Below the pieces are notes generated by a model, which saw only the letters and a program-made list of their open reading frames with translations, made no database searches and was not told where the DNA came from. Positions 31,901 to 61,650 of a stretch of 64,000 bases of DNA are shown here, piece by piece. The stretch is taken from contig NC_135808.1 in NCBI RefSeq assembly GCF_964213995.1, forward strand, positions 12,524,001-12,588,000, in the 5' to 3' direction. Origin of the DNA: Mustelus asterias (lineage: Eukaryota). The translations under genes were made by a program, and so were the position numbers. The first letter of the stretch is position 1. Each line of letters begins with the position of its first letter.

Positions 31901-32360
31901 TGATCCTCAATATACAGCAATTCTTCACTGGGGACAGTGATCCTCAATATACAGCAATTCTTCACTGAGAACAGTGATCCTCAATATACAGCAATTCTTC
32001 ACTGTGAACAGTGTTTTTCAATATACAGCAATTCTTCACTGGGAACAGTGTTTTTCAATATACAGCAATTCTTCACTGGGAACAGTGTTTTTCAATATAC
32101 AGCAATTCTTCACTGGGGACAGTGTTTTTCAATATACAGCAATTCTTCACTGAGAACAGTGATCCTCAATATACAGCAATTCTTCACTGGGGACAGTGTT
32201 TTTCAATATACAGTAATTCTTCACTGGAGACAGTGTTTTTCAATATACAGCTATTCGTCACTCTGTACAGTGTTTTTCAATATACAGCTATTCGTCACTC
32301 TGTACAGTGTTTTTCAATATACAGCAATTCTTCACTGGGAACAGTGTTCCTCAACGTACA
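28925..32360. repeat. 37-bp (and 36-bp variant) minisatellite, roughly 90 copies: caatatacagcaattcttcactggggacagtg(atcct|ttttt)
   Basis: Head-to-tail units without unique spacers, degenerating at both ends; occupies the predicted 3'UTR of gene A. Confidence 0.98.
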
Positions 32361-32436
32361 CCGATTTTCCTGATTCAATATCACTCTTCAGTGGGACTTT
32401 GCTGCTGGGATTAGATGATGGTCCAGTCATCTCCTG
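32332..32436 (-). CDS. Gene A terminal coding exon (cytoplasmic tail and stop)
   Basis: Very strong acceptor ttcttttttcaatcttttgttcag|cag; phase 0. QEMTGPSSNPSSKVPLKSDIESGKSVYVEEHCSQ followed by TGA. Confidence 0.68.
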   Translation of the reverse strand, partial: QEMTGPSSNPSSKVPLKSDIESGKSVYVEEHCSQ

Positions 32437-34450
32437 CTGAACAAAAGATTGAAAAAAGAACATGAGTTGTCATGTTTGCAAACAGCGAAATAGGAATGCA
32501 CGAAATGGGAATGCACCTGACAATCCATTGCTTCAGCCAGTTACTGCCACTGAATTTATTACCTATTCTGACTATTCCCCCATTTACCCCCAATTTTCCA
32601 GTCCTTTCCTACCTCCATAACTGACTCTTCCATCATCCTACATCAATTCAACACTTTCCATTTTCCTGACCCTAACCATCTCTTTGTGAGAACGTGCAAA
32701 CCCTAAAAAGACAATCACCCAAGGCCGGAATTGAACCCAGGTTCCTGGCGTTGTGAGGCAGCAGTGCTAACCACTTTGCCACTGTGCCGCCCCCTTTCCA
32801 TTCCAGCCATTCACAACTTATCAAGTCACATGTTTCATTTCTTTACTTTCACCTTTATCATTTGTTCTGTAATAAAAACAGAAAATACTGTAGATGGTCA
32901 GCACTGAGCTTGTACATTCTCCCCGTGTCTTCGTGGGTTTCCTATGGGTGCTCCAGTTTCTTCCCACACTCCAAAGATATGCAGTTTTGGTGATTAACCA
33001 TGCTAAATTGCCCCTTAGTATCGGGGGGCTAACAGAGTAAATATGTGGGGTTACGAGGATAGAGCCTGGCTGGGATTGTTGTCGGTGCAGGCTCGATGGG
33101 CCGAATGGCCTCCTTCCGCACTGGAGGGATTCTATGATTTTATTCCCAGCATCTGCAGCATTTTGCCTTGGAAAGTAAAAGGTTGACTTTTTTTTAAAAA
33201 ATCTGCAAGTAGGAACTTTAATTAATAACATCCACTTGACTCTTTAAAAGATGCCTTCAATTGAATTTTTTTTTAGACATGAATAATTCTTATTATTCAA
33301 GTTTGCAGTATAAACCTTCAAGCAGTTTGGTTTTCACAATAAATATTATTATGGACTAGTCAGTAATACAGTTATTGAAATCCTCTCTATAAAGGCAGAA
33401 CGTTTGAGTATCCTCGCGTTTCCTAAGTTTAGTCACTTTTCAAGAGTAAATTCATTGCAACTTGATAAAGACAAATTAGTTCTAAATTTTTAACTGGCAT
33501 TAAACTCAAGAATATTAATATAATCTTGTACATTTTTCCCTCAAGCAGGGTTTACTTTCATTGCTCTATAAAATATTGACAAAACTTTGTAAAAATAATC
33601 CTCCCATCTGTGTGTCACCAAAATCAAACAACACAGCATGCAGTCAATGTTGGAATGTAACCAGTGACAACTTTGTATTGGAGGTAATGTGACCAATGGT
33701 AACAAGCTGTAAGGGTCAGCTGACCCAATAAACCATGGAACCAATTGCAGAATGATGTGATAGTCAGCTGACTCACTATAAATAAGAACCTGTTGGGAAT
33801 TGTGGATTGGCCGAGGGCGAGGCCACAGGTTTGGAGTAATGAAGTTTCTTTATTAAACCCTTTCTTTGATTTATAAGTTGGAGTACGTTTTGGCATATTT
33901 TATTGTCTGCATTTGAAGAGTTCCTTCCGAAGAAAGTCAACACTGTGGCCATCCATACTTTTGGCTCAATTTCCTCATTCTCCATTAAAAAAATACTCAC
34001 CAACAGCAAAATGGGTGGCACTGTGGCACATGGGCATCATGATGCCACATAGGCGGCACAGTGGTTACCACTGCTGCCTCACAGCACCAGAGGCCCAGCT
34101 TCGATTCCCGGCTTGGGTCTCTGTCTGTGCGGAGTCTGCACATTCTCCCCCTGTCTGCTTGGGTTTCCTCCCACAGTCTGAAAGATGTGCTGGTTAGGTG
34201 CACTGGACGTGTTAAATTCTCTGTCAGTGTACCCGAACAGGCACCGGAGTGTGGCAACTATGAGATTTTCGCAGTAACTTCATTGCAGTGTTAACATAAG
34301 CCTACTTGTGACACGAATAAATAAACTTTTAAAAAATATATAATTGTATCACCATTTCTGACTACAATAAAGGAATGAACGGTTTACAGAACGGTTCAAA
34401 GCAACAGATGAATTTCTAACTGATCACTTGTGTTTGGTTCCAATACTTAC

Positions 34451-34503
34451 AATCCTCTCAGCCTCAGCATTGTTTCCATCGGTCTGTTTGGTGCATGTTT
34501 TAC
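34451..34503 (-). CDS. Gene A exon: first cytoplasmic-tail exon
   Basis: Acceptor ttgttcaccatcagcag| (NAGNAG) and donor ATT|gtaagt; 53 nt, phase 1-0. (C)KTCTKQTDGNNAEAERI. Confidence 0.7.
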
Positions 34504-34769
34504 CTGCTGATGGTGAACAAATACAAGGAGTGATATCAATGAGAAAATCAACTAAGCAAAAGTTTTCAATAAATAGACCATTAATTAGCCCATAAATTAT
34601 TTCGCAGAGCTAGTCAGCCTTTAATTTTTAACCAGGTGGTGTGCCAAGGTTTAACAAGTCATAGGAAATTCCATTGTTCATGATAATATTAACCTATTTA
34701 TTTCAAATGCTCTAAAGTAACATAGGAATTCCATAGAAATATATTAAAAACTGGAGGATCGCCTGCCAT

Positions 34770-35231
34770 CACCAGATGGCAGGCCTGTCATGTGAGGAGA
34801 GACTAAGTCGGTTAGAATTCTATTCACTGGTGTTTAGAAGAGTGAGGAGGCATCTCATAGAAACTTATAAAATTCTAACAGGGTTAGACAGGGTAGATTC
34901 AGAAAGAATGATCCCAATGGTGGGGGAGTCCAGAACTAGGGGTCATAGTTTGAGGATAAGAGGTAAACCTCTTAGGACTGAGGTGAGGAGAAATTTCTTC
35001 ACCCAGAGTGTGGCGAATGTGTGGAATTCACTACCATTGAATGTATTTGAGGCCAAAACGTTGTCTGATTTCAAGAAATTAGATATAGCTCTTGGGTAAA
35101 AGGGATCAAGGGATATGGGAGAAAAGGGGGGAATCAGGATATTGAATTCGATGATCAGCCATGATCAAAATAAATGGTGCAGCAGGCTCAAAGGGCCAAA
35201 TGGCCTACTTCTGCTTCTAGTTTTCTATGTT
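34770..35231 (+). mobile_element. CR1 LINE 3' fragment
   Basis: LIETYKIL...TRGHSL...RRNFFTQ..WNSLP. Confidence 0.88.
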
Positions 35232-36562
35232 GCCATCATTTCAAAACTCAGCAATGTTGTCCTTTGATCTTAGGGTAATAAGAAAATAGAACTGAGACAG
35301 TCAAAATAAGTGAATGTGGCAAGAAAAAGTGAAGGTGACTGATTGGTCTTGTGCAAAGACAAGTAAAATATGAACAAAAGTTTTTCTGTAATGAATGGAG
35401 GTAGGGTGGCACAGTGGTTAGCACTGCTGCCTCACAGCACCAGGGACCTGGTTCAATTCCGGCCGACAGTGTGTGTGGAGTTTGCACGTTCTCCCCGTGT
35501 CTGCGTGGGTTTACTAAGGGTGCTCTGGTTTCCTCCTACACTCCAAAGATGTGTGGGTTAGGTGGATTGGCCATGCTGAACTGACCCTTAGTGTCAGGGG
35601 GACTAGCATGGTAAATACGTGAGGTTACGCGGATAGGGCCTGGCTGGAATTGTTGTTGGTGCAGAATGTTGGACCCCCTTGGAGGACGAGAGGGGGGATT
35701 TAATAGTGGGAAATAAGGAAATGGCTGAAGCTTTAAATAAGTTTTTTGTGTCGGTCTTCACGGTGGAAGACACCAATTGTTTACCGAATATTAACGATAG
35801 AGGGTTGGTAGGAGGAGAGGTACTCAATACAATTAATGTTACCAGGGAGGCAGTGCTTGGTAGACTAACGGGACTGAAGGTGGACAAGTCCCCGGGCCCG
35901 GATGGAATGCATCCCAGGGTACTGAAAGAATTGCCAGAGGTAATAGCGGATGCGTTAGTGGTTATTTATCAAAATTCATTGGATTCTGGGGTAGTGCCGG
36001 CGGATTGGAAAACGGCTAATGTTACGCCGCTGTTTAAAAAAGGAAATAGACAAAAGGCGGGTAACTACAGGCCGGTTAGCTGAACGTCTGTAGTTGGGAA
36101 AATGCTAGAATCCATCATTAAAGAAGAAATAGCAGGCCATCTGGATAAGAATGGTTCGATTAAGCAGACGCAGCATGGATTCATGAGGGGAAAGTCATGC
36201 CTGACGAACATGTTGGATTTTTATGAAGATGTGACTAGTGCGGTTGACGGAGGGGAACCGGTGGATGCGGTGTTTTTGGATTTCCAAAAGGCGTTTGATA
36301 AGGTACCTCACAAAAGGTTGCTGAAGAAGATTGGGTCACACGGAGTTGGGGGTAGGGTGTCAGCGTGGATTGGCTATCCGACAGGAAGCAGAGAGTCGGA
36401 ATAAATGGGTGCTTTTCTGGTTGGCAGATGGTAACTAGTGGCGTGCCGCAGGGATCGGTACTGGGGCCTCAACTATTTACCATTTATATAGACGATCTGG
36501 AGGAGGGGACTGAGTGTAGGGTAACAAAGTTTGCAGACGACACAAAGATAAGTGGAAAAGTG

Positions 36563-36970
36563 AACTTGGCTATTCCGCACACATGAGGACGGCCTAAACC
36601 GAGATGTTGGATTTATGTCACATTATCAGTAAGCCCAACAGCTTGCCTCCTGGGCTTGTAGAATCTCACTAGCTGTTCTGTCTGGAGACAATACACATTT
36701 CTTTAACCTGTGTTTAATGTTCCCTCCACCCACATTGTCTGTACCTTTAAGACCTGGCTGGCGGTAGGATTTGCATTCTAATCAGTATTCTGCAACTTGA
36801 TTTTGTCTGTTTGCACTGTTTGAGAGCACATTTCCACTCCATCTGACGAAGGAGCAGTGCTCCGAAAGCTTATGGTATTTGCTACCAAATAAACCTGTTG
36901 GACTTTAACCTGGTGTTGTGAGACTTCTTACTGTGTTCACCCCAGTCCAACGTCGGCATCTCCACATCAT
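36563..36970 (+). mobile_element. Penelope-like element 3' end (same family as 13463-14093)
   Basis: [19 protein letters not shown] followed by a 3' region ending ggcatctccacatcat. Confidence 0.85.
36839..36875 (+). ncRNA. Minimal type I hammerhead ribozyme motif in a Penelope terminal repeat
   Basis: CCAU-CUGACGA-A-GGAGC-agu-GCUCC-GAAA-GCUU-AUGG: intact core, helix I CCAU/AUGG, helix II GGAGC/GCUCC, palindromic AGCU helix III. Confidence 0.7.
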
Positions 36971-39096
36971 TGCTGCATCTGTACAGGGCTTTGGTGAGGC
37001 CGCAGCTGGAATACTGTGTGCAGTATTGGTCCCCTTATTTGCGGAAGGATATATTGGCCTTGGAGGGAGTGCAGAGAAGGTTCACCAGGTTGATACCAGA
37101 GATGAGGGGGTGTTGATTATGAGGAGAGACTGAGCAGATTGGGTTTGTACTCGTTGGAATTTAGAAGGCTGAGGGGGGATCTTATAGAGACCTATAAGAT
37201 AATGAAGGGGCTGGATAGGGTAGAGGTGGAGAGATTCTTTCCACTTAGAAAGGAAACTAGAACTAGAGGGCACAGCCTCAAAATAAAGGGGGGTCAGTTT
37301 AGGACAGAGTTGAGGAGGAACTTCTTCTCTCAGAGGGTGGTGAATCTCTGGAATTCTCTGCCCACTGAAGTGGTGGAGGCTACTTCGTTGAATATGTTTA
37401 AATCACGGATAGATGGATTCCTGATCGGTAAGGGAATTAGGGGTTATGTGGATCAGGCGGGTAAGTGGAACTGATCCACTTCAGATCAGCCATGATCTTA
37501 TTGAATGGCGGGGCAGGCTCGAGGGGCTAGATGGCCTACTCCTGCTCCTATTTCTTATGTTATGTTCTGATGTTCTTATGTTCAGACGCGATGGGTCAAA
37601 TGGCCACCTTCTCCACTGTCGAGATTCTAATATTCTACGAGTGAACATTCCATTACATGTTGAAACAATGTTAAATATATACGCCATGTAATCACTTTTT
37701 CATTCACAAAAATTAATTACCAATAATATTGATTTTGTTATTGCTAGATTCAAGGAAGGGAAGACATTTCTGAACTGTGGTCAGAAGAACTTCCTTGATT
37801 AGTGTGTCTAGCCTAACTGAAGAGGAGGCATTGCTGGATCCAGGGATGGGAAATGAGGTGGGTAAATAGACCAATGTGGGAACATCTGGTTAAGAGTGAC
37901 CACGTATCTTAAGGTTTATCTTGGTAAGCGACAAATCAAATATAGAACATCTAATTTGGAGCATAATTTCATTATGATGAGAAGGAATCGAGCCAGGATA
38001 GAATGGAACGACATAAAAGACTGATTAACAAAGTCAAGGCTTATGGACTGGAGGAATAAGAATGGAGCCAGATGAGAGCCACCACACCCAGCTGGGCAAC
38101 AGTGCATTGCGGGTTAGTGGGGCGGCACGGTGGTACAGTGATTAGCACTGCTGCCTCACAGCGCCAGGGACCCGGGTTCGATTCCCGGCTTGGGTCACTG
38201 TCTGTGTGGAGTTTGCAAATTCTCCCTGTGTCTGCGTGGGTTTCCTCCGGGTGCTCCGGTTTCCTCCCACAGTCTGAAAGACATGTTGGTTTGGTGCATT
38301 GACTCAAACAGGCGCCATAGTGTGATGACTAAGGGAATTTAACTGCAATGAAGTTACTGTGAACGTCAGCTTGAGATTAATGAATAAACCTTTTTTTTCT
38401 TTTTAACTACGTCAAAGGCTGCAGACAGGTTGAGAAGAACAAGAGTCATACAGTGCAGAAAAGGACCTTTGGCTCATCGAGTCTGCGAGAGGAAAAAGTT
38501 TACACGTGTCACAGTCACGTAGGATGTCATCTTTTACATTGGTGGGAGCCATTTTGTGCTGCGTTGGGACAGAAACCTGATTGGAGGGATTCAAAGATGG
38601 GAGGTCACGGAAAGATTGCAATGGATTTGGGAGGTGAAAACACATTTAAAGATTTTGGAGGGCAATGGGAGGTTGCAGATAGGATGGTATTGGGCAAGGA
38701 CACTGAAGTCAATGGTTGTTTTTTTACTGGAGAGGGATGATGACATCAGATTTGAAGGAGACCTTTAACAAAACCAGCTGACATTGGAGCCAGGAGGGGA
38801 CATGGTAAGGTTCTGTGGATTAGTGGAAACAGGATTGAGGGAACAGGGGGCGGATTTCAGGGGCAGAATGATCTTACAGGGGGCAAGAGGGGCAATAAGA
38901 AAGTAAGTAGAGGAAGATGCGAGTTTGGGGCTGGATCAGGGGGAAGCAAAGACGTTTGGGCCTGGTGAGCTCGTGGAATTGTTGGATGGTCTTGAACTTA
39001 GTGCCAATGTAGCCCATCTGATCTTTGTACTTATTGCTGAAGGGGAGGATGGAGGAGCAGGGAGGCGAGGTTTCGGTGGAGAAAAGAAGTCGGGAT

Positions 39097-39927: not shown

Positions 39928-40017
39928 ATAGCACAAGGACTGCAAGCAAGAAAATTGGCAGCACCACAGCAAGAATTCTACTTGTTTGTAGATAGAATGT
40001 TGCCTCGCATCCTTTAT
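39928..40017 (-). CDS. Gene A exon: extracellular loop with Cys plus transmembrane helix 5
   Basis: Acceptor tcttatcaatcgcag| and donor T|gtaagt; 90 nt, phase 1-1. (D)KGCEATFYLQTSRILAVVLPIFLLAVLVL. Confidence 0.82.
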
Positions 40018-40506
40018 CTGCGATTGATAAGATACAAACACAGAAATTGTAGTTCTAATCAGCACCATTAATCAAAAGACTGAATGCAGTCACTGAAAAT
40101 GAATACAATAAATATATATTGTAATGCACAGGCCGGAATTTTCTGGCCATTACCACCAATGGAATGTTCCGGCCCCACTGACAGTGAATCCGCCCCCCAC
40201 CCCCCCACCGACCCCCTCACCTCCCCGACCCCCTCACCTCCCCGACCCCCTCACCTCCCCGACCCCCTCACCTCCCCACCCCCCCAGCCACAGGTTGACA
40301 ACGGTGGGACCGGTAGAATCTGCCCCTGGCCAATGGCGGGCCAACTCCGCTGCCATTAAACACACCACGGGGAGCACAGAAAATCCCATCTTAGTCTTCA
40401 CTGTAAGCACACAAATCATGAGAAAAATTAACTGAGGCCTTTCACTTATAGAAATCTTTAGCTCCCAACCTTTGAACTTGCATGATAATCACCAATATAA
40501 AATAAA

Positions 40507-42013
40507 GGGCCCGATTTTACCAAAATTTTGCGCCTGTTTTCGGGCGCGAAATCGCGGTAAAGTTGGGCGTCGGGCCTAAAACGCGATCTGCACCCAACTC
40601 ATGGCAGATCGCGTCTTTACCGAGCGCCGATCCGGGCGTGGGTCTGGCATGCATTTGCATGCATTTAAATCGACTGAATGAAGCTCGCGCCCAACTTTAC
40701 CGATGAATCCGACTTCACCAGGTTGCAGCCCATTTCGCCCCTGCGCATTAAACGACCTGCTAAATAAAAGTCCGAATGGGACTTCAATTCAGCAGGGAAA
40801 CCGCCGAAGCCAATCCCCCCCGACCATCCTTAGTGGACCCCACCCCCCACGAACCACCCCGCAGCCACCCCCCCCGTCCCCCCCCCACTGATCAGACCCC
40901 CCTGGGAGGCAGGCCCCGCTGGCAGACCCCCCCCCCCGGGATCGGACCCCCTTGGGAGGCACACCCCTGACCTAGCTTGATCGCCGGTCTCCCTCCACCA
41001 TCCTTCCGATCTGTAGTCCGTCGACAGCCTCATGCATGTTCCTGGCCTTGCTCTGCCTTTCCCTGGGGGTGGGGGGTGGGGGGGGATGGAGAAGGGGAGT
41101 GACGTGTCTCCCCTGAGGGAGGGGGAGTGGAGAAGGGGAGTGACGTGTCTGCCCCTGGGGGGGGGGGGGGGGGGGCCTGCCAGTCTGCGGCCGATCCCTC
41201 CGCCCCACCGGAGGAGGGATCGGAGGAGGGATCGGAGGAGGGATCGGAGGAGGGATCCCCCCCCCCCAGGGGCAGACACGTCACTCCCCTTCTCCATTCC
41301 CCCCCCCCCCCCCCCCCAGGGAAAGGCAAAGCAGCACAGACAGCAGAGAGGATGAAAGGAATTCCCTTTGGAGGATAATGTCCAAATCACGGGAACTAAA
41401 AACCTGACAGTCCAAAATCTGGGATAATATTTCAAAGTGTATATCCCCCCATCCCTGTCCTGTAATATTATGATGTGGAGATGCCGGCGTTGGACTGGGA
41501 GTAGTCTCACAACACCAGGTTAAAGTCCAACAGGTTTATTTGGTAGCAAATACCATAAGCTTTCGGAGCACCGCTCCTTCGTCATTTGGAGTGGAAATGT
41601 GCACATTTCCACTCCATCTGACGAAGGAGCAGCGCTCCAAAAGCTTATGGTATTTGCAACCAAATAAACCTGTTGGACTTTGACCTGGTGTTGTGAGACT
41701 TCTTACTGTAATATTATCCCAGATTTTGGACTGTCAGGTTCCTGTGATTTGGACATTATCCTGCAGAGGGAATTCCTTTCATCCTCTCTGCTGTCTGCGC
41801 TGCTTTGCCTTTCGCGCCCGAGCGCGCTGCCTGCGGTCTGTTCCGAACTGCGCATGCGCAGTTGGAGCTCCGGCCGCTCCAATAGCGTTAAGCCCCGCCC
41901 AATAGACCGGTGCCGAAAAAAGACGTATGGGCACGCTGGAGCGCGGCTGCCGGGCGCGGATCCGTTTGACGACCGGACCCGGCACTTAGTCCCGATTTGG
42001 TAAAATCGGCCCC
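40507..42013. mobile_element. Non-autonomous DNA transposon (PIF/Harbinger-like MITE), GC-rich, with nested insertion
   Basis: TIRs gggcccgattttaccaaa / tttggtaaaatcggccc flanked by aaa on both sides; related copy at 63224-64000. Confidence 0.75.
41471..41708. mobile_element. Penelope terminal repeat in inverted, palindromic arrangement
   Basis: Arms match 36830-36970; centre aaatgtgcacattt near 41601; flanked by direct repeat ctgtaatattat. Confidence 0.8.
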
Positions 42014-44083: not shown

Positions 44084-44170
44084 CCGCTCGATTATTTAGT
44101 TCCACAATCTGGAACGCTGACCCAATGATCACACTGATTTCACCCAATGCAGTTACCAAAGGCAGTGAAA
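44084..44170 (-). CDS. Gene A exon: transmembrane helix 4
   Basis: Acceptor ttttatttatctccag| and donor G|gtgagt; 87 nt, phase 1-1. (I)SLPLVTALGEISVIIGSAFQIVELNNRA. Confidence 0.78.
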
Positions 44171-47814: not shown

Positions 47815-47943
47815 TTTTGATCTTCAAGGTATCAAGTAACTTTTTTCTTTTCTTGTCACAAGCCTTCTTACAAATCAATAATAAGGACGATATTAGCGCG
47901 GGACAAAGAGGAAGCAGCAACATCCACCGTGTGTTATGAAGTC
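47815..47943 (-). CDS. Gene A exon: transmembrane helix 3 plus basic cytoplasmic loop
   Basis: Acceptor tttttgttctttcaatag| and donor A|gtaagt; 129 nt, phase 1-1. (G)LHNTRWMLLLPLCPALISSLLLICKKACDKKRKKLLDTLKIK. Confidence 0.82.
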
Positions 47944-48639
47944 CTATTGAAAGAACAAAAAGTCAGATTAAAAGTCATTGCTGCTTAATTCACCACCTCT
48001 GAAAACATAACAAGAATATGCAGCATGCCAATCACTGGCGGGTTTTATGGTGCACTTGAGGGTGATACAACAGATGTAATATATGGATGTTCAAGGGAGT
48101 TATAAGGAGAGGCTGGAACTACCTCGGTAGCATCCAAGAATTACAGCCCCAATACACTTCAAAGACTTGGTTACATGCTTGAGGAACAGAATTGAAACTA
48201 CAGTAACAACTCAGCCTTCAACACCATTGTTCCTACAAAACCCATCTCCAAACCCCGTGGCTTAGGGCTTGGCTCCTCCCTCTGCGACTGGATCTCAAAC
48301 CAGAGTCTAAGTACATGGCTTAGCGAGGAACAGTGATTCCCGCAATCCTGGCTGGAATTCTCCAATGTCGTGTGCCCAGCCGCTGCCGTCAGCGAGAACA
48401 GAGAATTTGATGCTTGGCCAAAGCTCCATTTATTGCAGCAGGACTGGAGAATCCCAGCCATAGGCGAGGCTGGAGAATTACAGCCCCAATACACTTCAAA
48501 GACTTGGTTACATGCTTCAGCCACACTTAGTTTCATGCAGGAGTCTCCAAGAGTGTTATCCCAAGCACAGGTACCTTCAGTTGTTTCATGAATGACACAC
48601 TTTCAACATGAAGTCAGAAAGTGAGGTTCTTTCCTGATG

Positions 48640-49705
48640 TTCAGCCTTCAACACCATTATCCCAACCAAACTCATCCCCAAACTCCATGCCCGAGGGCTC
48701 GGCTCCTCCCTCTGCAACTGGATCCGAGACTTCCCAGCCCACAGACCATAATCTATAAAGATAGGCAACAACACCTCCTCAACATCGGTGCCCCACAAGG
48801 CTGTGTCCTCAGCCCCTTACTATACTCCTTCAACACCTTTGACGGTGTGGCCAAATTGCCCATCAACTCGATTTTCAAGTTTGCTGACAACACCACCGTA
48901 GTGGGTCAGACCTCAAATAATGATGAGACAGAGTACAGGAATGAGATAGAGAATCTGGTGAACTGGTGTGATGCCAATAATCTCTCCCTCAATGTCAGCA
49001 AAACGAAGGAGATAGTCATTGACTTCAGGAAGCACAGTGGAGGACATGCCCCTGTCTACATCAACGGGGATGAAATGGAAATGGTCGAGAGCTACAGGTT
49101 CCTCAGTGTCCAGATCACCAACAACCTGTCCTGGTCCCTCCATGCCAATGCTATAGTTAAGAAAACCCACCAACGCCTCTACTTTTTCAGGAGACTAAGG
49201 AAATTTGGCATGTCAGCTATGACTCTCACCAACTTTTACAAATGCACCATAGAAAGCATTCTTTCTGGTTGTATCACCGCTTGGGATGGCACCTGCTTCA
49301 AGACCGCAAGAAACTATAAAGGGTCGTGAATGAAGCCCAGTCCATCACACAAACCAGCCTCCCATCCAATGACTCCGTCTACATTTCCCACTGCCTCAAA
49401 AGCAGCCAGCATAATCAAGAACCCCCTGGACATATTCTCTTCCACCTTCTTCCGTCGGGAAAAAGATATACAAGTTTGAGCTCACGTACCAACCGACTCA
49501 AGAACAGCTTCTTCCCTGCTGCCATCAGACTTTGAATGGATGGATCTTTCACTACACCCTAACTATGATTGTAACACTATATTCTGCACTCTCTCCTTTC
49601 CTTCTCTATGTAAGGTAAGCTTTGTCTGTATAGCGAGCAAGAAACAATTCTTTTCACTCTAGACTAATATGTGACAATAATAAATCAAGTCAAATCAAAA
49701 TCAAA
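48640..49705 (+). mobile_element. Rex1/Babar-type LINE RT/3' fragment
   Basis: [14 protein letters not shown]...KFADNTTVVG...NLSLNVSKTKEIVIDFRK; (AATCA)n tail. Confidence 0.9.
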
Positions 49706-51154: not shown

Positions 51155-51925
51155 ACATAGAACATAGAACAGTACCGCACAGAACAGGCCCTTCGGCCCA
51201 CGATGTTGTGCCGAGCTTTATCTGAAACCAAGATCAAGCTATCCCACTCCCTATCATCCTGGTGTGCTCCATGTGCCTATTCAATAACCGCTTAAATGGT
51301 CCTAAAGTGTCTGACTCCACTATCACTGCAGGCAGTCCATTCCACACCCCAACCACTCTCTGCGTAAAGAACCTACCTCTGATATCCTTCCTATATTTCC
51401 CACCACGAACCCTATAGTTATGCCCCCTTGTAATAGCTCCATCCACCCGAGGAAATAGTCTTTGAACCTTCACTCTATCTATCCCCTTCATCATTTTATA
51501 AACCTCTATTAAGTCTCCCCTCAGCCTCCTCCGCTCCAGAGAGAACAGCCCTAGCTCCCTCAACCTTTCCTCATAAGACCTACCCTCCAAACCAGGCAGC
51601 ATCCTGGTAAATATCCTCTGCACTCTTTCCAGTGCTTCCACATCCTTCTTATAGTGAGGTGACCAGAACTGCACACAATATTCCAAATGTGGTCTCACCA
51701 AGGTCCTGTACAGTTGCAGCATAACCCCATGGCTCTTAAACTCCAACCCCCTGTTAATAAAAGCTAACACACTATAGGCCTTCTTCACAGCTCTATCCAC
51801 TTGAGTGGCAACCTTTAGAGATCTGTGGATATGGACCCCAAGATCTCTCTGTTCCTCCACAGTCTTCAGAACCCTACTTTGACCCTGTAATCCACATTTG
51901 AATTAGTCCTACCAAAATGAATCTG
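51155..51925 (-). mobile_element. Young CR1 LINE 3' end
   Basis: 208-aa uninterrupted ORF2 C-terminus and (TTCTATG)n tail. Confidence 0.92.
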
Positions 51926-52885: not shown

Positions 52886-53527
52886 CAAATGTAATGTTGT
52901 CATTTATCTCAAGAGGCTTGGAATACAAAAGCAGGGATGTACTTCTGAGGCTTTATAAAGCACTGGTTAGGCCCCATTTGGAGTACTGTGAGCAATTTTG
53001 GGCCCCACACCTCAGGAAGGACATACTGGCACTGGAGCGGGTCCAGCGGAGATTCACACGGATGATCCCAGGAATGGTAGGCCTGACATACGATGAACGT
53101 CTGAGGATCGTGGGATTATATTCATTGGAGTTTAGGAGGTTGAGGGGAGATCTGATAGAAACTTACAAGATAATGAACGGCTTAGATAGGATGGACGTAG
53201 GGAAGTTGTTTCCATTAACAGGGGAGACTAGGACGCGGGGGCACAGCCTTAGAATAAAAGGGAGTCACTTTAGAACAGAGATGAGGAGAAATTTCTTCAG
53301 CCAGAGAGTGGTGGGTCTGTGGAATTCATTGCCACAGAGGGCTGTGGAGGCCGAGACGTTGAGCGTCTTCAAGACAGAAATTGATAAATTCTTGATTTCT
53401 CGAGGAATTAAGGGCTATGGGGAGAGAGCGGGTAAATGGAGTTGAAATCAACCATGATTGAATGGTGGAGTGGACTCAATGGGCCGAATGGCCTTACTTC
53501 CGCTCCTATGTCTTATGGTCTTATGGT
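52886..53527 (+). mobile_element. Young CR1 LINE 3' end inserted into an antisense SINE
   Basis: 183-aa uninterrupted ORF2 C-terminus and (TTATGGTC)n tail. Confidence 0.92.
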
Positions 53528-54155: not shown

Positions 54156-54245
54156 TTAACATGTTAAATTGGAATTTAATGTGTCAGAATTTCTGCATTG
54201 TAGGAATACCAACTGGGAGCAAAGAAACAGAAGCTCAAACAGTAC

Positions 54246-54347
54246 CTTCAACTGGAATCCAACACAGCATCGCACCAGCAAAAAGGAGAAATGACAGCAT
54301 TGGCAAATACTGCCAGGCTTGGAGCACATATTGGAGAGAGAGAAAAC
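54246..54347 (-). CDS. Gene A exon: transmembrane helix 2
   Basis: Acceptor ctcatcattgcag| and donor AAG|gtactg; 102 nt, phase 1-1. (C)FLSLQYVLQAWQYLPMLSFLLFAGAMLCWIPVE. Confidence 0.8.
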
Positions 54348-54459
54348 CTGCAATGATGAGCAAATTCACATCAATATTACTTGAACAAATAATATTCACA
54401 TATCTGAAACAATTGCCCCACATTCAGAAACTGATTTTGGTTTCTAAATTTGAATTATT

Positions 54460-54743
54460 AATGTCACAAGTAGGCTTACATTAACACTGCAATGAAGTTA
54501 ACTGTGAAAATCCCCGAGTCGCCACACTCCAGTGCCTGTTCGGGTACACTGAGGGAGAATTTAGCACAGCCAATGCATCTAACCAGCACGTCTTTCGGAC
54601 TGTGGGAGGAAACCAGAGCACCCGGAGGAAACCCACGCAGACACGGGGAAGATGTGCAGACTCTGCACAGGCAGTGACCCAAGCCGGGAATCAAACCTGG
54701 GTTCCTTGGAGCTGTGAGGCAGCAGTGCTAACCACTGTGCCAC
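54460..54743 (-). mobile_element. V-SINE, tail B, between the TM1 and TM2 exons
   Basis: Reverse head, core and tail B. Confidence 0.85.
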
Positions 54744-54851
54744 CTAAAATGATACCAATATGGCTTTTAAAATTTCATACAGTCTCTATTATTAAATGTG
54801 ACATTTTTGAAACTTTCAACACCAACGGAAGAAATAACAGATTTCTCTTAC

Positions 54852-54965
54852 ATTTAGTTTTCGACACGAGCAGGAATGAAATGATTGTACAGCTTAAGAC
54901 AGGGCCAGCAGTAGTCAATGTGGCAACAAACAATCCTATTGTGCAATAATGCAGCGGTGAAAGAC
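54852..54965 (-). CDS. Gene A exon: transmembrane helix 1
   Basis: Acceptor ctatttcag| and donor T|gtaaga; 114 nt, phase 1-1. (S)LSPLHYCTIGLFVATLTTAGPVLSCTIISFLLVSKTK. Confidence 0.82.
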
Positions 54966-56969
54966 CTGAAATAGATTTGAAACTTCAATATTTTGATAGC
55001 AGTTTACAAGTTACAAGCAAGATTTTCTTCCCCTTGGGATATGATTATTAAGCATTCTGACTGTTGAAAATAGAACACTCTCCACCAGGGACCCAGTTGC
55101 GACCTTCAAGCATTCTCACACCTATTCAAGGTGACATACCATACGCTCATAGAATCCCTACAATGGCAGAAGAGGCCATTCGGCCCATTGAGTCTGCACC
55201 GACTCTCTGACAGAGTATCTTACCCAGACCCTCTCACCTACCCTACCCCCAAAACCCCACACATTTACAATGGCTAATCCATCTAACCTGCACTTCTTGG
55301 GACACTAATGGACAATTTAGCATGGCCAATCTACCTAACCTACATATCTTTGGATTGTGGGAGGAAACTGGAACACCCGGAGAAAACCCACACGGATATG
55401 GGGAGAATGTGCAAACTCAACACAGACAGTCACCCGAGGTTGGAATTGAATCCGGGTTCCTAGCGCTGTGAGGCAGCAGTGCTAACCACTGTGCTTCCTT
55501 TAGATGCATTGCAAAATATTCTCCATTCTGCCCCAAAAATAGGGTGTTCCAGTTTTCTTCCACAGTCCAAAGATGTACAGGTTAAGTGGATTGGCCATGC
55601 TAAATTGCCCCTTAGTGCCCAACAATGGGTTGGTTAGGTGGATTGGCCATGCTAAATTGCTCCTTGGTCATGTAGGTGAGGGGACGGGGATTAGTGGGGT
55701 AAATACGTGGGATTATGGGGATAGGGTCTGGGTGGGATGCTTCGTTGGAGGGTTGGTGCAGACTCAATGGGCTGAATGACCTCCTTCTGCACTGCAGGGA
55801 TTCTATGATTCTCAGAATATACTTTGGCTCCACGATCAGGAGTTTACCAGTGCTTCATTTTCCACATTGAGCAAATTGCCTGCAATCTGAAGGAAACAAC
55901 ATACTTAAAAGTGAAACTTTACACTTTGGCACTCAGTAAATGCCGGCAATGTATATTACTTGTTTGTTCTGTAAATTCAGTCGTTTTTTCCCCTTTGGGG
56001 AATTGTACAGGAAGCATGAGAATAATTTTCAGGGCGGTTCTCAAACCTGTTGCACCATGTCTGTGGCCATCAAGTTCTGGGACTTGGACCCAGAGCGTTC
56101 AAACGTGCTGCCGACTGAGACACAATGCTGAGAGCTTGCTTCCCCTTGTGGGAGAGTCTAGGACCAGAGGGAATAATCTCAGAGGAAGGGGTTGCCCTAA
56201 GACAGAGATGGGGAGGAATTTATTTTCTCAGAAGGTAGTGAATCTGTGAAATTCAGAAACTATATTGTTAACTATGTTCAAGGCTGAGATAGACAGATTT
56301 TTAATCAGTAAGGGAATTGAGGGTTATGGGGATGAGGCGGGATAGTGAAGTTGAGGATTATCACATCAGGTCAGTCATGATCTCATTGAATGGTGCAGCA
56401 GACCCGATGGGCTAAATGGCTTTCTTCTGCACTTGTACCTTATGGCCCGAGTGTACATTGGGAAACTGTGCACTAGCAGTTTGTGATTTTCCATCCCAGT
56501 CCTTCCTCCTGTTCTGAAAATATTACAGAGTCATAGAATCCCTACAACGCAGAAGGAGGGCATTCGGCCCATCGAGCCTACACCAGTAACAATCCCACCC
56601 AGGCCCTATTCCTGTAACCGCATGTATTTACCCTGCTAACCCCTTTGACACTAAAGGGCAATTTACCATGGCCAATTCACCTCATCTGCACATCTTTGGA
56701 GTGTGGGAGGAAACCAGAGCACCTGGAGGAAACCCACGCAGACACGGGGAGAGTGTGCAAACTCCACATAGACAGTCACCCAAACCGGGAATCGAGCCCG
56801 GGTCCCTGGTGCTGAGAGGCAGCAGTGCTAATCATTGTGCCACAGTGCTGCTTAATATACAATATTATTCCCAAATTGAGCCCTTCAGTGAACCTGGATA
56901 TAAGGCAAGTTAGTGGAACATTGTTTCACCAAAATTATTAAAGCAATTGACTCCCCTGGCTTGACTCAC

Positions 56970-57224
56970 TGTAAAATGCGAGAATATGTGAACTGCTGCC
57001 CGTGCTAACACGATTTTCCATTGTACAAACGTAGATGTCACAGTTGGCTTCAGAGATAATCAGTGTGCTGTTGCTTTGCACTAATCGATAATGTTGACCA
57101 TTTGTTATCACTTTGTCATCTTTCCTCCACAGAATAGAACTCGCTTCCCCAACAGACACCAGGCAGGTTAACTTGGTTGTGCCGTTCACGTTAGTTTCAT
57201 TGATGAAAGGTTCCGACAGTGGTT
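56970..57224 (-). CDS. Gene A exon: IgC2/I-set domain
   Basis: Acceptor ctccctcccacag| and donor A|gtgagt; 255 nt, phase 1-1. Translates PLSEPFINETNVNGTTKLTC...ILWRKD...NSTLIISEANCDIYVCTMENRVS...ILAFY, with a C-W-YxC core and one extra Cys. Confidence 0.92.
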
Positions 57225-57327
57225 CTGTGGGAGGGAGTTAGATAAACAGATTGGAGCATGAGACTTTATCTCAAAAGTGGTTAACCAATAACAGCTCGCT
57301 CATTCACTGCTACATAACTGTTCAGAA

Positions 57328-57835
57328 TAGAACAAAGTACAATACACCACAGGAACAAGCTCTTCGGCCCACCAAGCCTGCGCCGATATGCAGTTTCTAT
57401 CTCTCTAATCGCCTCCCGTTCTATCAGGGTCTATCAGGACCTTGAACATTGCTAATGTGGCTGCTTACACCACCTCCACTGGCAATGCGTTCCAGGCACC
57501 CACCACCCTCTGTGTGAAAAATTTTCCCCACTCGTCTCCCCTAAACTTACCACCTCTCACCTTAAACCTGTACCCTCTTGTAGTCAACCCTTCCACCCTG
57601 GGAAAAAGCCTCTGACTAGCCCCACTATCTACGAGTCTCATAATTTTGTAGACCTCTATTAGTTTGCCCCTCAGCCTCTGTCTTTCCAGTGAAAACAATC
57701 TGACTTTATCCAACCTCTCCTCATACCTAAAACTGTCCCGACCAGGCAACATCCTGGTGAACCTTCATTGCACCCTCCCAAAGCATCCACGTCCTTCTGG
57801 TAGTGTGGTGACCAGAACTGTACGCAATACTCCAA
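57328..57835 (-). mobile_element. CR1 LINE 3' fragment
   Basis: YEERLDKVRLFSLE...FFTQRVVGAWNALP. Confidence 0.85.
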
Positions 57836-59854
57836 TAACTTAAAGCCAAGTTTTCTGATGCCATAATCCTATTGGAAAGATGGTCAACCTCCAATATCAC
57901 CCAACTCAGGAACCGCTTTAGCCCAGCTGATGTTGAAGTCCTCACCCCTAAACTCCACTATTCCAATGCTGTATAGGCAACCTCCATCCACCAGTTCTTT
58001 TAACCTCTGCTGTTGCTCTCCTATCCGATATCACGTTCCACTCACCCGTCACTCCAACCCTTACTGACTTGCATCGGGTCCTGTCCCTCAATGTCTTAAA
58101 TTTAAAATTCTCATTAAATCCCACCACATCCTAACTCTCTCTAATCCCCTCTAATGCGTCAAAGGCACCCCCCAAACCCCCACCCACCAAAATCTCCTGT
58201 CTACCCAATCTGGTCTTTTACACATTCCAGCACTTTCAGCTTCCTTTGCAAATTTCCCCTCCCCCTGCTGCTCCTTCCTCCCATTGAAAAATAAATACAT
58301 ATTCACGTGTCCACACAGCCAGGAAGGAAACTGTTCACTCTTGGCTGGCTAGAAAAGAGCTGGAGGAGGCCACAGCCTAGTGGTATTATCGCTGGACTAT
58401 TAATCCAGAAACTCAGCTAACGTTTTGAGGACCCGGGTTCAAATCCTGCCACGGCAGATGGTGAATTCAATAAAAAAGCATATCTGGAATTAAGAATCTA
58501 CTGATGACCATGAAACCATTGTCGATTGTCGGAAAAAGCCATCTGGAACGCTAATGTCCTTCAGGGAAGGAAATCTGCCGTCCTTACCCGGTCTGGCCTA
58601 CATGTGACTCCAGAGACAAAGCAATGTGGTTGACTCTCAATTGTCCTCTGAACAAGGGCAACGAGAGATGGGCAATAAATGCTGCGACGCCTAGTCCCAC
58701 AAGGGTGGCACAGTGGCTAGCACTGGTTGGCACAGTGGCACAGTGGTTAGCACTGCTGCCTCACAGAGCCAGGGACCCGGTTCAATTCCGGCCTTGGGTC
58801 ACTGTATGCGTGGAGTTTGCACGTTCTCCCCGTGTCTAGGTGGGTTTCTCCTGTGTGCTCCGGTTTCCTCCCACACTCCAAAGATATGCGGGTTAGCTTG
58901 ATCAGCCATGCTAAATAGGATGTGTAAGTTAGAGGGATTAGTGGGGTAAATGTGTGGGGTTGTGGGAATAGGGCCTGGGGTGGGGTTGTTGTCAGTGTAG
59001 ACTCGATGGGCTGAAGGGCCTCCTTCTGCACTGTTGGGTTTCTATGATTTCTCCGAATAAAAAAAAAGTCTAATCTCACAATTCAAGATTGTGGTATGTA
59101 AGCATGGTTAAACAACCACAACATAAAAAGGAGGGATAGGCCACTCAGTTCCTTGAGCCTTCTCCACCTTTAGGTGGTTGATCAGATCACAATCTTAACT
59201 CTATATTCCTACCCCACCATTGTCGTTCAAAAATCTGTCCTCAATCATCCAGCTTCCACTGCTCTCTGGCTAGAATCAAGATCCAATTATTCCACAGAGC
59301 AATGTTTCTCTTTATAATAAATTCACCAACCATTTACTAGTGTTTTCAGAATGACCTGGTTTGGTATACAACCCCTGGATGGGGAGCAGCTGTTCCCCTT
59401 TAGTTGAAGGGTCAGTCATGAGGGGACATAGGATCAAGATGAGGGGCAGGAGGTTTAAGGGGGATGTGATGAAAAATATTTTTAATCCCAAGGGTGGTGA
59501 GGGTCTGGAATGCGCTGCCTGGGAGGGTGATAGAGGCGGGTTACCTCACATCCTTTAAAGAGTACCTGGATCAGCACTTGGCACATCGTAACATTCAAGG
59601 CGATGGGCCAAGTGCTGGCAGATGGGATTAGGTGGAAGTTCAGGTGTTTCTTGTGTGTCGGAGCAGACTCGATGGGCCGAAGGGGCGCTTCTGCCCTGTA
59701 TGATTCTGTTCCTGGTTATGTGTAAGAAACAGAATCCCTGCACAGCACAGTTTCATCTTTTCCTCAGTTAGCCTGATGCCAGTGACATGTTACTAAACCC
59801 CGCATCCCACCGCACCTCCTCATTCTGGGCAGAATTAAACAGCCTCAGTTGACT

Positions 59855-60146
59855 TTAAAGTTTATTTATTAGTGTCACAAGTAGGCTTACATTAACAGTG
59901 CATCGAAGTTACTGTGAAAATCCCCTAGTTGCCACACTCTGGCGCCTGTTCGGGTACACTGTGGGAGAATTTAGCATGGCCAATGCACCTAACCAGCACA
60001 TCTTTCGGACCATGAGAGGAAACCGGAGCACCCGGAGACCCACGCAGACACGGGGAGAATGTGTGCAAACTCCGCACAGACAGTGACTCAAGGCAGGCAT
60101 CAAACCGGGGTCCCTGGCGCTGCGTGGCAGCAGTGTTAACCACTGT
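59855..60146 (-). mobile_element. V-SINE, tail B
   Basis: Reverse head, core and tail B. Confidence 0.85.
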
Positions 60147-61344
60147 ACCCTGACAACCCTACTGCATTCTAATGAAATCTCTTGCCACAGCATAACTTTA
60201 CTTGAATCTTTCACTTCTGCAGTATACCCCCCATTCTCCACTGTAGTTAGTTCATTAGTAACATTTTTAAGATTTATTAAATCGAAGTCATACACTGGCA
60301 ATGAGACATAAAACATTCATAATCTCAATCCTGATAGTGTTCACCTCTCCCTTTCACAGACTTTCCCCCATCAAAAACTTCCAATAGACTGAAACTGAGG
60401 AACAGTAGCACCATTAAATCGATGGATAATGGATCACATTTCCTGAGGGATTCCAGCCAGGATGACAGATAGGGCAACAACAATGGGAAGTGAATGAACT
60501 CAAAACTTTAAGGTTTCAATTATTTTCTGAGCGGATCAATGATTCAGTTTAATCTGGGATGAAGTGAGCAATCAACCATCAATTCATCCAGAACATTGTC
60601 TTAAAATCAGAGCCTGTGAAACACACAGCTAACTGAAATCAGTGTTTTAGCCCCACACACAAGACAACTGAATTAAAACGTGTAAGACTCAGATCACAGA
60701 CGTTTCTGTTCGGTAAATGGATGTGGGGGGTAATGGATGTGAGAGATAAGTTTTTTTAAGTTTAGTTATTAGTGCCACAAGTAGACCTACACTAACACTG
60801 CAATGGGGTTACTGTGAAAATTCCCTAGTCGCCACACTCCATCGCCTGTTCGGGTACATTGAGGGAGAATTTATTTATTTATTCATTCATTCATGGGACG
60901 TGGGCGTCGCTGGCTGGTCAGTATTTACTGCCCATCCCTAGTTGCCCAAGCGCAGTTGAGAGTCAACCACATTGCTTGGTCTCTGGAGTCACATGTAGGC
61001 CAGACCAGGCAAGGACAGAAGATTTCCTTCCCTAAAGGACATTAGTGAACCAGATGGCTTTTCCCCGACAATCGACAATGGTTTCATGGTCATCATTAGA
61101 TTAATTCCAGATTTTTTTTTTATTGAATTCAAATTTCATCAACTGCCGTGGCGGGATTCGAACCCAGGTCCCCAGAACATTAACTGAGTTTCAGGATTAA
61201 TAATCTAGCGATAATACCACTCGCCATCGCCTCCTCTAAGGCATGGCATATTCATGTTCCTATTCTGAGCTGGTTCTTAAGCAGTGAATAGTAAATGCGC
61301 TGAAATGTGCATCACTTTCAAGGTGAACTGTTGAAAACACTTAC

Positions 61345-61650
61345 GAACAGGTTTCAAATCAGTACTCCATTTCCAGACTCCACCTACAATGATGGTATAA
61401 ACCCCTTGGTCACTGGCTTTTAAATTGTTCAACATCAGGGACCCATTGGAGGTATTAAAAAATAGACAAGATCTGAAGTGTTCATTTGGTTCCTCTCTCG
61501 GATAATTTGGCAGATAATCCAGAATAATTACAGGATTTCCATTGCTGCCGTTGAACATCCATATAACATCATTGATGCCAAGGTCAACTCCATACCCAGG
61601 ATCCAGTAAAACTGAAGAACCAACGACTCCAATTGCTTCCTTCCTTCCAA
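61345..61650 (-). CDS. Gene A exon: IgV domain, CD2/SLAM/CEACAM type (first coding exon visible in the window)
   Basis: Acceptor ttttgttttaatcag| and donor C|gtaagt; 306 nt, phase 1-1. Translates GRKEAIGVVGSSVLLDPGY...VIWMF...NGSLMLNNLKASDQGVYTIIV...DLKPV, with the V-set W and DxGxY motifs but no canonical B/F-strand cysteines. Confidence 0.92.

What the first reader, a model, noticed from the sequence alone, without database searches (positions are those of the whole stretch)
32332..61650. Hidden gene encoding a two-Ig (V+C2) receptor with five transmembrane helices: a CD47-like 5-TM module under a CD2/SLAM-like ectodomain
SEEN: nine minus-strand exons with GT-AG sites splice into one stop-free frame of about 412 aa: IgV (306 nt), IgC2 (255), five hydrophobic exons (114, 102, 129, 87, 90; all phase 1-1), a 53-nt phase 1-0 exon and a terminal exon. 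Basic residues follow TM1 (KTK), TM3 (KKACDKKRKK) and TM5 (KTCTK), the positive-inside pattern expected for N-out/C-in 5-TM topology. KNOWN: CD2/SLAM/CEACAM receptors are single-pass or GPI-anchored; CD47 is the textbook Ig plus 5-TM protein and has one IgV. From memory, CD47 also puts one TM helix on each phase-1 exon, followed by a short phase 1-0 tail exon. By-eye similarities to human CD47 as I recall it: linker AFYSLSP vs VSWFSP, TM2 end AGAMLCWIPVE|G vs VGAILFVP|G, LHN vs LKN. INFERENCE: a CD47-related membrane domain joined by phase-1 exon shuffling to a SLAM-like V-C2 ectodomain, potentially an uncharacterised cartilaginous-fish immune or adhesion receptor family. I cannot tell whether it is already annotated.
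Basis: partly seen in the sequence, partly recalled or inferred. Interest (0 to 1): 0.92.

Follow-up and report, generated by a model that had tools for sequence, protein, structure and literature searches.

The report
Two-Ig receptor on five-pass anchor
This is a real shark gene, already in RefSeq but only as an unnamed prediction, for a cell-surface protein with two antibody-like domains on a five-helix membrane anchor; it belongs to an unstudied family also found in amphibians, reptiles and birds, and it is built like CD47 without showing detectable kinship to it.

Summary
All nine minus-strand exons are at the stated coordinates with good splice sites. They match RefSeq XP_078075397.1, isoform X1 of LOC144497831, "uncharacterized protein", Mustelus asterias. 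So the gene is annotated, not hidden. Its leader exon lies outside the window. RefSeq also predicts isoforms that skip the TM4 exon (X2) or the TM1 exon (X3).

The V-C2-5TM architecture defines an unnamed family. It occurs in sharks and rays (expanded into several paralogue lineages), a newt, turtles, alligator and ratite birds. Automatic names include HEPACAM-like, CD48-like and SLAMF9-like.

The modelled ectodomain fits NTB-A/SLAMF6, CD48 and CEACAM1 best.

CD47 homology of the membrane domain got no support. There was no CD47 hit in Pfam, in PDB sequences (exon by exon and by family profile), in Foldseek, in VIA-align or in BFVD. What remains is a CD47-like design: five helices, one per phase-1 exon, and a conserved cysteine pair that could tie C2 to the TM4-TM5 loop.

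The scan noted a similar gene 377 kb away (s1-891360).

The parts
61345..61650 (-). Exon E1, IgV domain (306 nt, phase 1-1); residues 33-133 of RefSeq X1. It has no canonical B-F cysteine pair.
   Evidence: V-set E 2.5e-6; 100% identity to P0003 33-133.
56970..57224 (-). Exon E2, Ig C2/I-set domain (255 nt, phase 1-1). It carries the canonical Cys pair plus one extra Cys in the 'ANCD' loop.
   Evidence: (Ig_3 7e-8, I-set 1.1e-7).
54852..54965 (-). Exon E3, helix TM1 followed by KTK (114 nt, phase 1-1). Skipped in RefSeq isoform X3.
   Evidence: (KD max 1.75); conserved in paralogues.
54246..54347 (-). Exon E4, amphipathic stretch plus helix TM2. It ends in the family's invariant Trp; the near-invariant Gly is the E4/E5 split codon (102 nt, phase 1-1).
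   Evidence: KD 1.99; W286 invariant, G291 at least 90%.
47815..47943 (-). Exon E5, helix TM3 plus a strongly basic inner loop (129 nt, phase 1-1).
   Evidence: KD 2.23; 9 K+R in the loop.
44084..44170 (-). Exon E6, helix TM4 (87 nt, phase 1-1). Skipped in RefSeq isoform X2.
   Evidence: (KD 1.82).
39928..40017 (-). Exon E7, outer loop with the conserved Cys ('KGCE'), then helix TM5 (90 nt, phase 1-1).
   Evidence: KD 2.49; C366 at least 90%.
34451..34506 (-). Exon E8, start of the cytoplasmic tail. Both keep the frame.
32332..32436 (-). Exon E9, last 34 codons and the stop. Its last 15 nt lie inside the 37-bp satellite that follows.

Best explanation
What it is. This is a real protein-coding gene of the starry smooth-hound, RefSeq LOC144497831. 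The window holds all of it except the leader exon. Its longest product (445 aa) has a signal peptide, a distal IgV domain without the usual intradomain disulfide, a membrane-proximal Ig C2 domain, five membrane helices each on its own phase-1 exon, and a short, poorly conserved cytoplasmic tail.

The family. It is one paralogue of an unnamed V-C2-5TM family. The family is multi-copy in sharks. In the tree the tetrapod rows sampled (newt, turtles, alligator, ratite birds) form one clade that follows taxonomy. All members are known only as automatic predictions.

How it most likely works (inferred).
- It sits N-out/C-in at the cell surface.
- The distal V domain binds a partner in trans, as CD2/SLAM/CEACAM ectodomains do.
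- An extra cysteine in the C2 domain is disulfide-linked to the conserved cysteine in the TM4-TM5 outer loop. This would pin the ectodomain onto the helix bundle as CD47 pins its IgV (recalled).
- Output goes through lateral contacts of the helix bundle and its basic inner loops, not through tyrosine motifs. The tails carry no ITSM or ITIM and are the least conserved part.

Relation to CD47. The likeness is one of design. Common descent of the membrane domain is neither shown nor excluded.
For: Gene and product (shown).
- Exons and splice sites.
- Identity to RefSeq X1, X2 and X3 of LOC144497831.
- Ig domains.
- Five helices: hydropathy and AlphaFold2 (pLDDT 77, pTM 0.68, helices 4-34, 41-72, 76-100, 103-145, 153-181 of the membrane part).
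- Charge distribution and six N-glycosylation sequons in the ectodomain.

Family.
- 26 proteins at E<=1e-5 with P0003.
- 30 at E<=1e-3 with the membrane region of the turtle protein alone.
- 43 at E<=1e-15 with the family profile.
- Tree of 31 rows: a tetrapod clade and an elasmobranch clade, both 100/100. This gene is sister to Scyliorhinus canicula LOC119976060.
- W286 is invariant; G291 and C366 are at least 90% conserved.

Ectodomain kind. Best-fitting two-domain structures among the rows listed are NTB-A, CD48 and CEACAM1b.

Cysteine pair. 68 of 78 family proteins have both cysteines. All 3 that lack the loop Cys also lack the C2 Cys.

Tails. No ITSM or ITIM in 28 of 28 tails. Tail identity is 0.11 between sharks and tetrapods, against 0.30-0.33 for the Ig domains.
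Against: - No transcript evidence was seen here.
- RefSeq X2 and X3 skip a membrane-helix exon. Similar one-exon-skipped isoforms are predicted in turtles and other sharks. So the five-helix form may not be the only or the main product.
- The cysteine-pair count includes isoforms and close orthologues. 4 of 78 proteins keep the loop Cys without the C2 Cys. No model coordinates were available to measure the distance.
- Binding partner, trans binding and signalling route are inference from architecture only.
- The membrane domain is less conserved than the Ig domains (0.14-0.23 against 0.30-0.33 between sharks and tetrapods). That fits an anchor as well as a signalling module.
- The AlphaFold2 models are of middling confidence (pLDDT 73-77).
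Confidence: 0.7

Rival explanations
1. The five-helix domain is a true homologue of the CD47 membrane domain. Either it was joined by phase-1 exon shuffling to a CD2/SLAM-like V-C2 ectodomain, or CD47 descends from such a V-C2-5TM ancestor by loss of C2. On this view the family is CD47's sister lineage.
For: - Same overall design: Ig ectodomain, five helices, short tail.
- One helix per phase-1 exon. That CD47 is built the same way is recalled, not tested here.
- A conserved outer-loop cysteine before TM5 plus an Ig-domain cysteine, at the place where CD47 has its long-range disulfide (recalled).
- Membrane helices diverge fast, so the negative sequence tests are weak evidence.
Against: - No CD47 membrane-domain family in Pfam for 10 of 10 full-length members, nor among the 25 listed families for the 17 membrane-only parts.
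- V-set_CD47 appears only below its cut-off (18.5 bits against 21), and on the C2 domain.
- The family profile found 0 PDB sequences at E<=10.
- Single exons found 0 hits, except E5 with 5-HT2C receptors at E about 0.7.
- The structure searches listed cytochrome b561, STEAP and designed bundles, not CD47. No poxvirus CD47-like protein appeared.
Confidence: 0.2
2. The five-helix protein is not the working product. The gene mainly makes exon-skipped forms with four helices (as RefSeq X2 and X3), or it is a decaying paralogue in an expanded cluster with little or no expression.
For: - RefSeq predicts X2 (without E6) and X3 (without E3).
- Exon-skipped isoforms recur in other species.
- No run on record as RNA holds the C2 exon.
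- This copy's C2 loop is shortened ('ANCD' in place of the family's 'K.SDCG'). Its V domain has Cys where 27 of the 28 aligned members have Arg or Lys.
- Its tail ends inside a satellite.
Against: - All nine exons are open with good splice sites.
- The invariant and near-invariant family residues W286, G291, C366 and the Ig core are kept.
- The orthologue in S. canicula has the same full architecture.
- Skipping one helix would put the basic loop and the conserved cysteine on the wrong sides of the membrane. Such forms are more likely by-products that survive because every helix exon is phase 1-1.
Confidence: 0.1

Closest known systems
CD47 (integrin-associated protein)
   Same: An Ig-superfamily ectodomain on five membrane helices with a short cytoplasmic tail, N-out/C-in. 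Each helix is on its own phase-1 exon; for CD47 this is recalled. A conserved cysteine lies in the TM4-TM5 outer loop and could bond to the Ig part; the CD47 disulfide is recalled.
   Different: - Two Ig domains (V + C2) instead of one IgV.
- The candidate tether would start from C2, not from the V domain.
- No detectable sequence, profile or listed structural match to CD47.
- Multi-copy in sharks.
CD2/SLAM family (NTB-A/SLAMF6, CD48, CD2, 2B4)
   Same: A V-C2 ectodomain whose V domain lacks the canonical disulfide. These are the best structural fits among the listed rows (2if7_B TMt 0.73, 2dru TMt 0.72). There are weak sequence hits to SLAMF6, CD48 and CD2 (E 0.15-1.4). RefSeq names some members CD48-like or SLAMF9-like.
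   Different: - Five membrane helices instead of one helix or a GPI anchor.
- No ITSM in 28 of 28 tails.
- The Pfam SLAM model stays below its cut-off.
CEACAM1 and HEPACAM (names RefSeq gives to relatives)
   Same: An N-terminal V domain without a disulfide plus C2-type domains. CEACAM1b fits the model with TMt 0.67. 'HEPACAM-like' is the commonest automatic name.
   Different: Those proteins are single-pass with long signalling tails (recalled). The names come from Ig-domain similarity only and ignore the five-helix region.

Membership tests
CD47 family | A single IgV ectodomain recognised by Pfam V-set_CD47 | tested here: not met
   There are two Ig domains. V-set_CD47 was listed for 3 of 10 members, always below its cut-off (best 18.5 bits against 21) and on the C2 domain.
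CD47 family | Membrane region recognised by the Pfam CD47 transmembrane model (that such a model exists is recalled) | tested here: not met
   No such family was listed for 10 full-length members at E<=1. None was among the 25 listed of 53 families for 17 membrane-only parts at E<=10.
CD47 family | Sequence similarity to solved CD47 chains | tested here: not met
   Exon by exon: E3, E4, E6 and E7 gave 0 hits, and E5 gave only 5-HT2C receptors at E about 0.7. The family profile of the membrane region gave 0 hits at E<=10.
CD47 family | Fold of the five-helix bundle like solved full-length CD47 | tested here: inconclusive
   No CD47 row among the rows listed by Foldseek PDB, VIA-align wide (50 rows) or VIA-align on Foldseek's 455 chains (50 rows). 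All listed matches are generic helical bundles below the tool's own bar for helical models. The 40% cluster representative for CD47 may be an ectodomain-only chain. No direct pairwise superposition was possible.
CD47 family | Five membrane helices, N-out/C-in, short tail | tested here: met
   Hydropathy maxima 1.75-2.49, five long helices in both models, basic inner loops.
CD47 family | Long-range disulfide between the Ig domain and the TM4-TM5 loop | tested here: inconclusive
   Candidate pair: the C2-loop Cys and the 'GC' loop Cys. Both are present in 68 of 78 proteins. The 3 that lack the loop Cys also lack the C2 Cys; 4 lack only the C2 Cys. The rows are not independent and no distance could be measured.
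CD2/SLAM family | V-C2 ectodomain with an N-terminal V domain lacking the canonical disulfide | tested here: met
   Pfam V-set and Ig_3/I-set. No conserved Cys in the V domain. Best structural fits are NTB-A and CD48.
CD2/SLAM family | Single membrane span or GPI anchor | tested here: not met
   Five helices.
CD2/SLAM family | ITSM (T-x-Y-x-x-V/I) in the tail of signalling members | tested here: not met
   0 of 28 tails hold an ITSM or an ITIM pattern.
CD2/SLAM family | Pfam SLAM or Receptor_2B4 model above cut-off on the V domain | tested here: inconclusive
   SLAM scored 20 bits against a cut-off of 25 in P0012. Receptor_2B4 scored 27.7 bits against 21 in P0015, but its best stretch lies on the C2 domain.
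Unnamed V-C2-5TM family (RefSeq 'uncharacterized', 'HEPACAM-like', 'SLAMF9-like') | Full-length colinear similarity, including the membrane region with its invariant Trp, the near-invariant Gly after TM2 and the loop Cys before TM5 | tested here: met
   This gene is sister to S. canicula LOC119976060 with 100/100 support.

The most novel reading that the evidence does not exclude
This family is the surviving sister lineage of CD47: an ancient jawed-vertebrate Ig-plus-five-helix receptor that kept a CD2/SLAM-type V-C2 ectodomain and a disulfide tether to the TM4-TM5 loop. It expanded in sharks, persists in amphibians, reptiles and ratite birds, and was not found in mammals or teleosts with these word-limited searches. 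If so, it would show how CD47 arose and would reveal a second 'marker' or adhesion system with its own unknown ligands.
Probability: 0.2. Interest if true: 0.85.

Novelty: new variant of a known kind. Interest (0 to 1): 0.6.

Why it matters
To my knowledge (recalled), CD47 is the only well-known Ig-superfamily protein carried on five membrane helices. It is a major immune checkpoint, and the origin of its membrane domain is unclear.

Here is a second family with the same design but a two-domain CD2/SLAM-like ectodomain. It is conserved from sharks to birds. It sits in databases under misleading automatic names, and none of the six literature searches turned up a paper on it.

- If the membrane domains are related, the family bears on how CD47 arose.
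- If they are not, it is a case of convergent design. That would suggest a disulfide-tethered Ig domain on a helix bundle is a recurrent solution for presenting a ligand at a fixed height and angle.

Either way it is a concrete, testable candidate for comparative immunology in species that have no known counterpart for it.

Tried and rejected
Ruled out.
- A chance set of ORFs. The model equals an independent RefSeq model, and every exon is conserved in other species.
- A leader exon in 61651-64000. Only two weak candidates turned up, and the RefSeq leader has no match in the window.
- SLAM-type signalling. There is no ITSM or ITIM.
- The 5-HT2C hit of exon E5 (E about 0.7) is a chance match of a helix followed by a basic stretch.

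Gave nothing.
- ESM Atlas on the membrane part.
- Six literature searches: I saw search listings only, and none is on this family. For bioRxiv 10.1101/2025.04.17.649282 I read two passages. They say nothing on CD47 exon structure, so that structure stays recalled.
- No supplements were opened.

Not done.
Whole-protein steps used RefSeq proteins that the tools returned.
So no profile-profile or pairwise comparison with CD47 was run.
- Synteny could not be examined.


Full report
**Observation**

- E1 61650-61345 (306 nt)
- E2 57224-56970 (255 nt)
- E3 54965-54852 (114 nt)
- E4 54347-54246 (102 nt)
- E5 47943-47815 (129 nt)
- E6 44170-44084 (87 nt)
- E7 40017-39928 (90 nt)
- E8 34503-34451 (53 nt)
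- E9 32436-32332, with the stop

The same mechanical scan lists many chance candidates of the short lengths. The lengths alone therefore mean little. The splice sites are good. Every acceptor follows a pyrimidine-rich tract. Six of eight donors are GTAAGT or GTGAGT. None of the seven split codons is a stop.

Pfam finds V-set in E1 (E 2.5e-6) and Ig_3/I-set in E2 (about 1e-7). It finds nothing for the short hydrophobic exons taken singly. Each of the five hydrophobic exons has a 19-residue Kyte-Doolittle maximum of 1.75-2.49.

**Identity**

A phmmer search of 1.84 billion representative proteins with the IgV exon alone gave 219 proteins at E<=0.001. One of them is a 407-aa protein 100% identical over the whole exon. 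Cluster look-ups name it XP_078075399.1, isoform X3 of 'uncharacterized protein LOC144497831' of Mustelus asterias. They also returned X2 (416 aa) and X1 (XP_078075397.1, 445 aa).

X1 carries, in order, the peptide of every one of the nine exons.
- A 32-residue leader precedes E1. It has no match in the window.
- RefSeq uses the E8 acceptor 3 nt upstream, a CAGCAG pair.
- X2 lacks E6 (TM4) and X3 lacks E3 (TM1).

The gene is therefore annotated, though only automatically and without a name. Searches with window sequence were made exon by exon. All whole-protein steps used the RefSeq proteins that the tools returned.

**Transcript evidence**

None could be obtained. No run on record as RNA holds the C2 exon. 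I worked beside that stretch afterwards and sent none of it to a search. The RefSeq isoforms are predictions whose evidence I could not see.

**The family**

With X3 as query, 26 proteins reached E<=1e-5. They come from Scyliorhinus, Heterodontus, Carcharodon, Cetorhinus, Rhincodon, Chiloscyllium and Heptranchias, plus three further Mustelus paralogues on the same 140.5-Mb record and one turtle protein.

Searching with only the membrane region of the turtle protein gave 30 proteins. They come from many turtles, Alligator, ostrich, emu and the newt Lissotriton. A profile of 28 full-length members gave 43 at E<=1e-15 and added rays and kiwi.

Their source names are 'uncharacterized', 'HEPACAM-like', 'CD48 antigen-like', 'CD276 homolog', 'SLAM family member 9-like' and 'CEACAM1-like'. 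The precomputed Pfam lists hold only Ig families. These searches need shared 5-residue words, so the lack of teleost or mammalian hits does not show absence.

A maximum-likelihood tree of 31 rows separates a tetrapod clade from an elasmobranch clade, both with 100/100 support. The elasmobranch clade holds several paralogue lineages. This gene is sister to S. canicula LOC119976060 (100/100).

In the 28-row alignment W286 is invariant. G291, the E4/E5 split codon, and C366, in the loop before TM5, are at least 90% conserved. Mean identity between sharks and tetrapods is:

| Region | Identity |
|---|---|
| IgV | 0.30 |
| C2 | 0.33 |
| Helix exons | 0.14-0.23 |
| Tail | 0.11 |

**Architecture and topology**

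AlphaFold2 on 17 membrane-only parts gave pLDDT 77 and pTM 0.68, with five long helices. The full-length model gave pLDDT 73 and pTM 0.49. It has two beta-sandwich domains followed by the same helices.

K+R counts are 2, 9 and 3 in the predicted inner segments, against 1 and 2 in the outer loops. The ectodomain has six N-x-S/T sequons. This fits N-out/C-in. No dedicated topology predictor was available.

**Ectodomain kind**

The V domain has no conserved cysteine pair. By sequence the IgV exon hits JAML best (E 2.8e-5). It hits SLAMF6, CD48 and CD2 weakly (E 0.15-1.4).

Among the listed Foldseek rows for the full-length model, the two-domain structures that superpose best are:
- NTB-A/SLAMF6 (2if7_B, TMt 0.73, rmsd 3.5, 21% identity)
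- CD48 (2dru, TMt 0.72)
- CEACAM1b (5vst, TMt 0.67)

The only listed row with CD47 in its title is an antibody chain. The ectodomain is thus CD2/SLAM/CEACAM-like. However, 0 of 28 tails hold an ITSM or ITIM.

**Is the membrane domain CD47-related?**

Every test I could run was negative or uninformative:
- Pfam on 10 full-length members at E<=1 lists no CD47 membrane family. V-set_CD47 appears only below cut-off, and on the C2 domain.
- Pfam on the 17 membrane-only parts at E<=10 lists 53 scattered families. None of the 25 shown is CD47.
- PDB sequences: E3, E4, E6 and E7 gave 0 hits. E5 gave only 5-HT2C receptors at E about 0.7. A profile of the membrane region gave 0 hits at E<=10.
- Foldseek of the membrane-only model against PDB gave 0 matches at E<=0.001 of 456 at E<=10. 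Cytochrome b561 and STEAP were on top.
- VIA-align on Foldseek's 455 chains gave the same picture.
- BFVD gave no poxvirus CD47-like protein among its 50 rows.
- ESM Atlas gave nothing usable.

Three caveats apply. The lists are truncated. The CD47 representative in the 40% clusters may be an ectodomain-only chain. The model is of middling confidence.

No CD47 sequence was available from a tool, so no profile-profile or pairwise test was run.

**What does speak for a CD47-like design**

Three things do: one helix per phase-1 exon, the short tail, and a candidate long-range disulfide.

I examined 78 family proteins that cover both regions:
- 68 have both the extra C2-loop cysteine and the loop cysteine before TM5.
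- 3 lack both. These represent two lineages: P0164, and P0015 with P0165.
- 4 lack only the C2 cysteine.
- 3 have a gap at the loop.

The rows include isoforms and close orthologues, so this is a lead and not a test.

**Mechanism**

Shown: the gene, its exons, its domains and the family.

Inferred:
- It is a surface receptor whose distal V domain binds in trans.
- Its C2 domain is tethered to the helix bundle by a disulfide.
- Its output runs through the bundle and its basic inner loops, not through tail motifs.

The exon-skipped isoforms would misplace the basic loop and the conserved cysteine. I read them as in-frame by-products made possible by the uniform phase 1-1 exons. Their recurrence across species leaves regulated topology switching open.

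**Novelty**

Six literature searches gave no paper on such a family. One of them used six RefSeq locus names and gave 0 papers. I saw listings only, and the library lacks most subscription journals.

The gene is already in RefSeq. What is new is the recognition of a conserved V-C2-5TM family spanning sharks to birds. I rate it a new variant of a known kind, interest 0.6. It is presumably one of the paralogues; I did not check it.

Noticed in passing
window 28933-32346: A 37-bp minisatellite of 92.7 copies (90% matches) begins right at the gene's 3' end. It overlaps the last 15 nt of the coding sequence including the stop, so the 3' UTR starts as 3.4 kb of satellite. tblastn shows weak echoes of the last 19 residues all along the array.
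   Followed up: partly
window 3420-3683, minus strand: An IgV-like stretch weakly similar to residues 39-120 of P0177 (tblastn E 0.004, 27% identity). It lies within the neighbouring single-IgV gene noted by another reader (s1-892544).
   Followed up: no
proteins P0003, P0159, P0188, P0196, P0198-P0206, P0179: RefSeq and UniProt isoforms that lack exactly one membrane-helix exon (TM1, TM3, TM4 or TM5) recur in shark and turtle members of the family. All helix exons are phase 1-1, so skipping keeps the frame. Whether these are by-products or regulated is unknown.
   Followed up: partly
proteins P0001 (Heptranchias), P0007 and P0166: Some family members have duplicated Ig domains (V-V-C2 or V-C2-C2) before the five helices. 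The ectodomain therefore varies by domain duplication.
   Followed up: no
window introns, e.g. 35679-36586 (+), 48637-49329 (+), 51234-51860 (-), 52894-53445 (+): Long ORFs that look like reverse-transcriptase or LINE fragments, and many copies on both strands of a short repeat giving ORFs of the '...AQWLALLPHSARDLGSIPG...' type. These are presumably a SINE. Calling them LINE and SINE is my recollection, not a tool result.
   Followed up: no
window 40001-42000: A G+C-rich patch (0.56 against about 0.44 around it) with overlapping proline- and glycine-rich ORFs on both strands, inside the E6-E7 intron. It looks like low-complexity sequence.
   Followed up: no
window 12350-12866: A run of 517 N (assembly gap or masked).
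   Followed up: no
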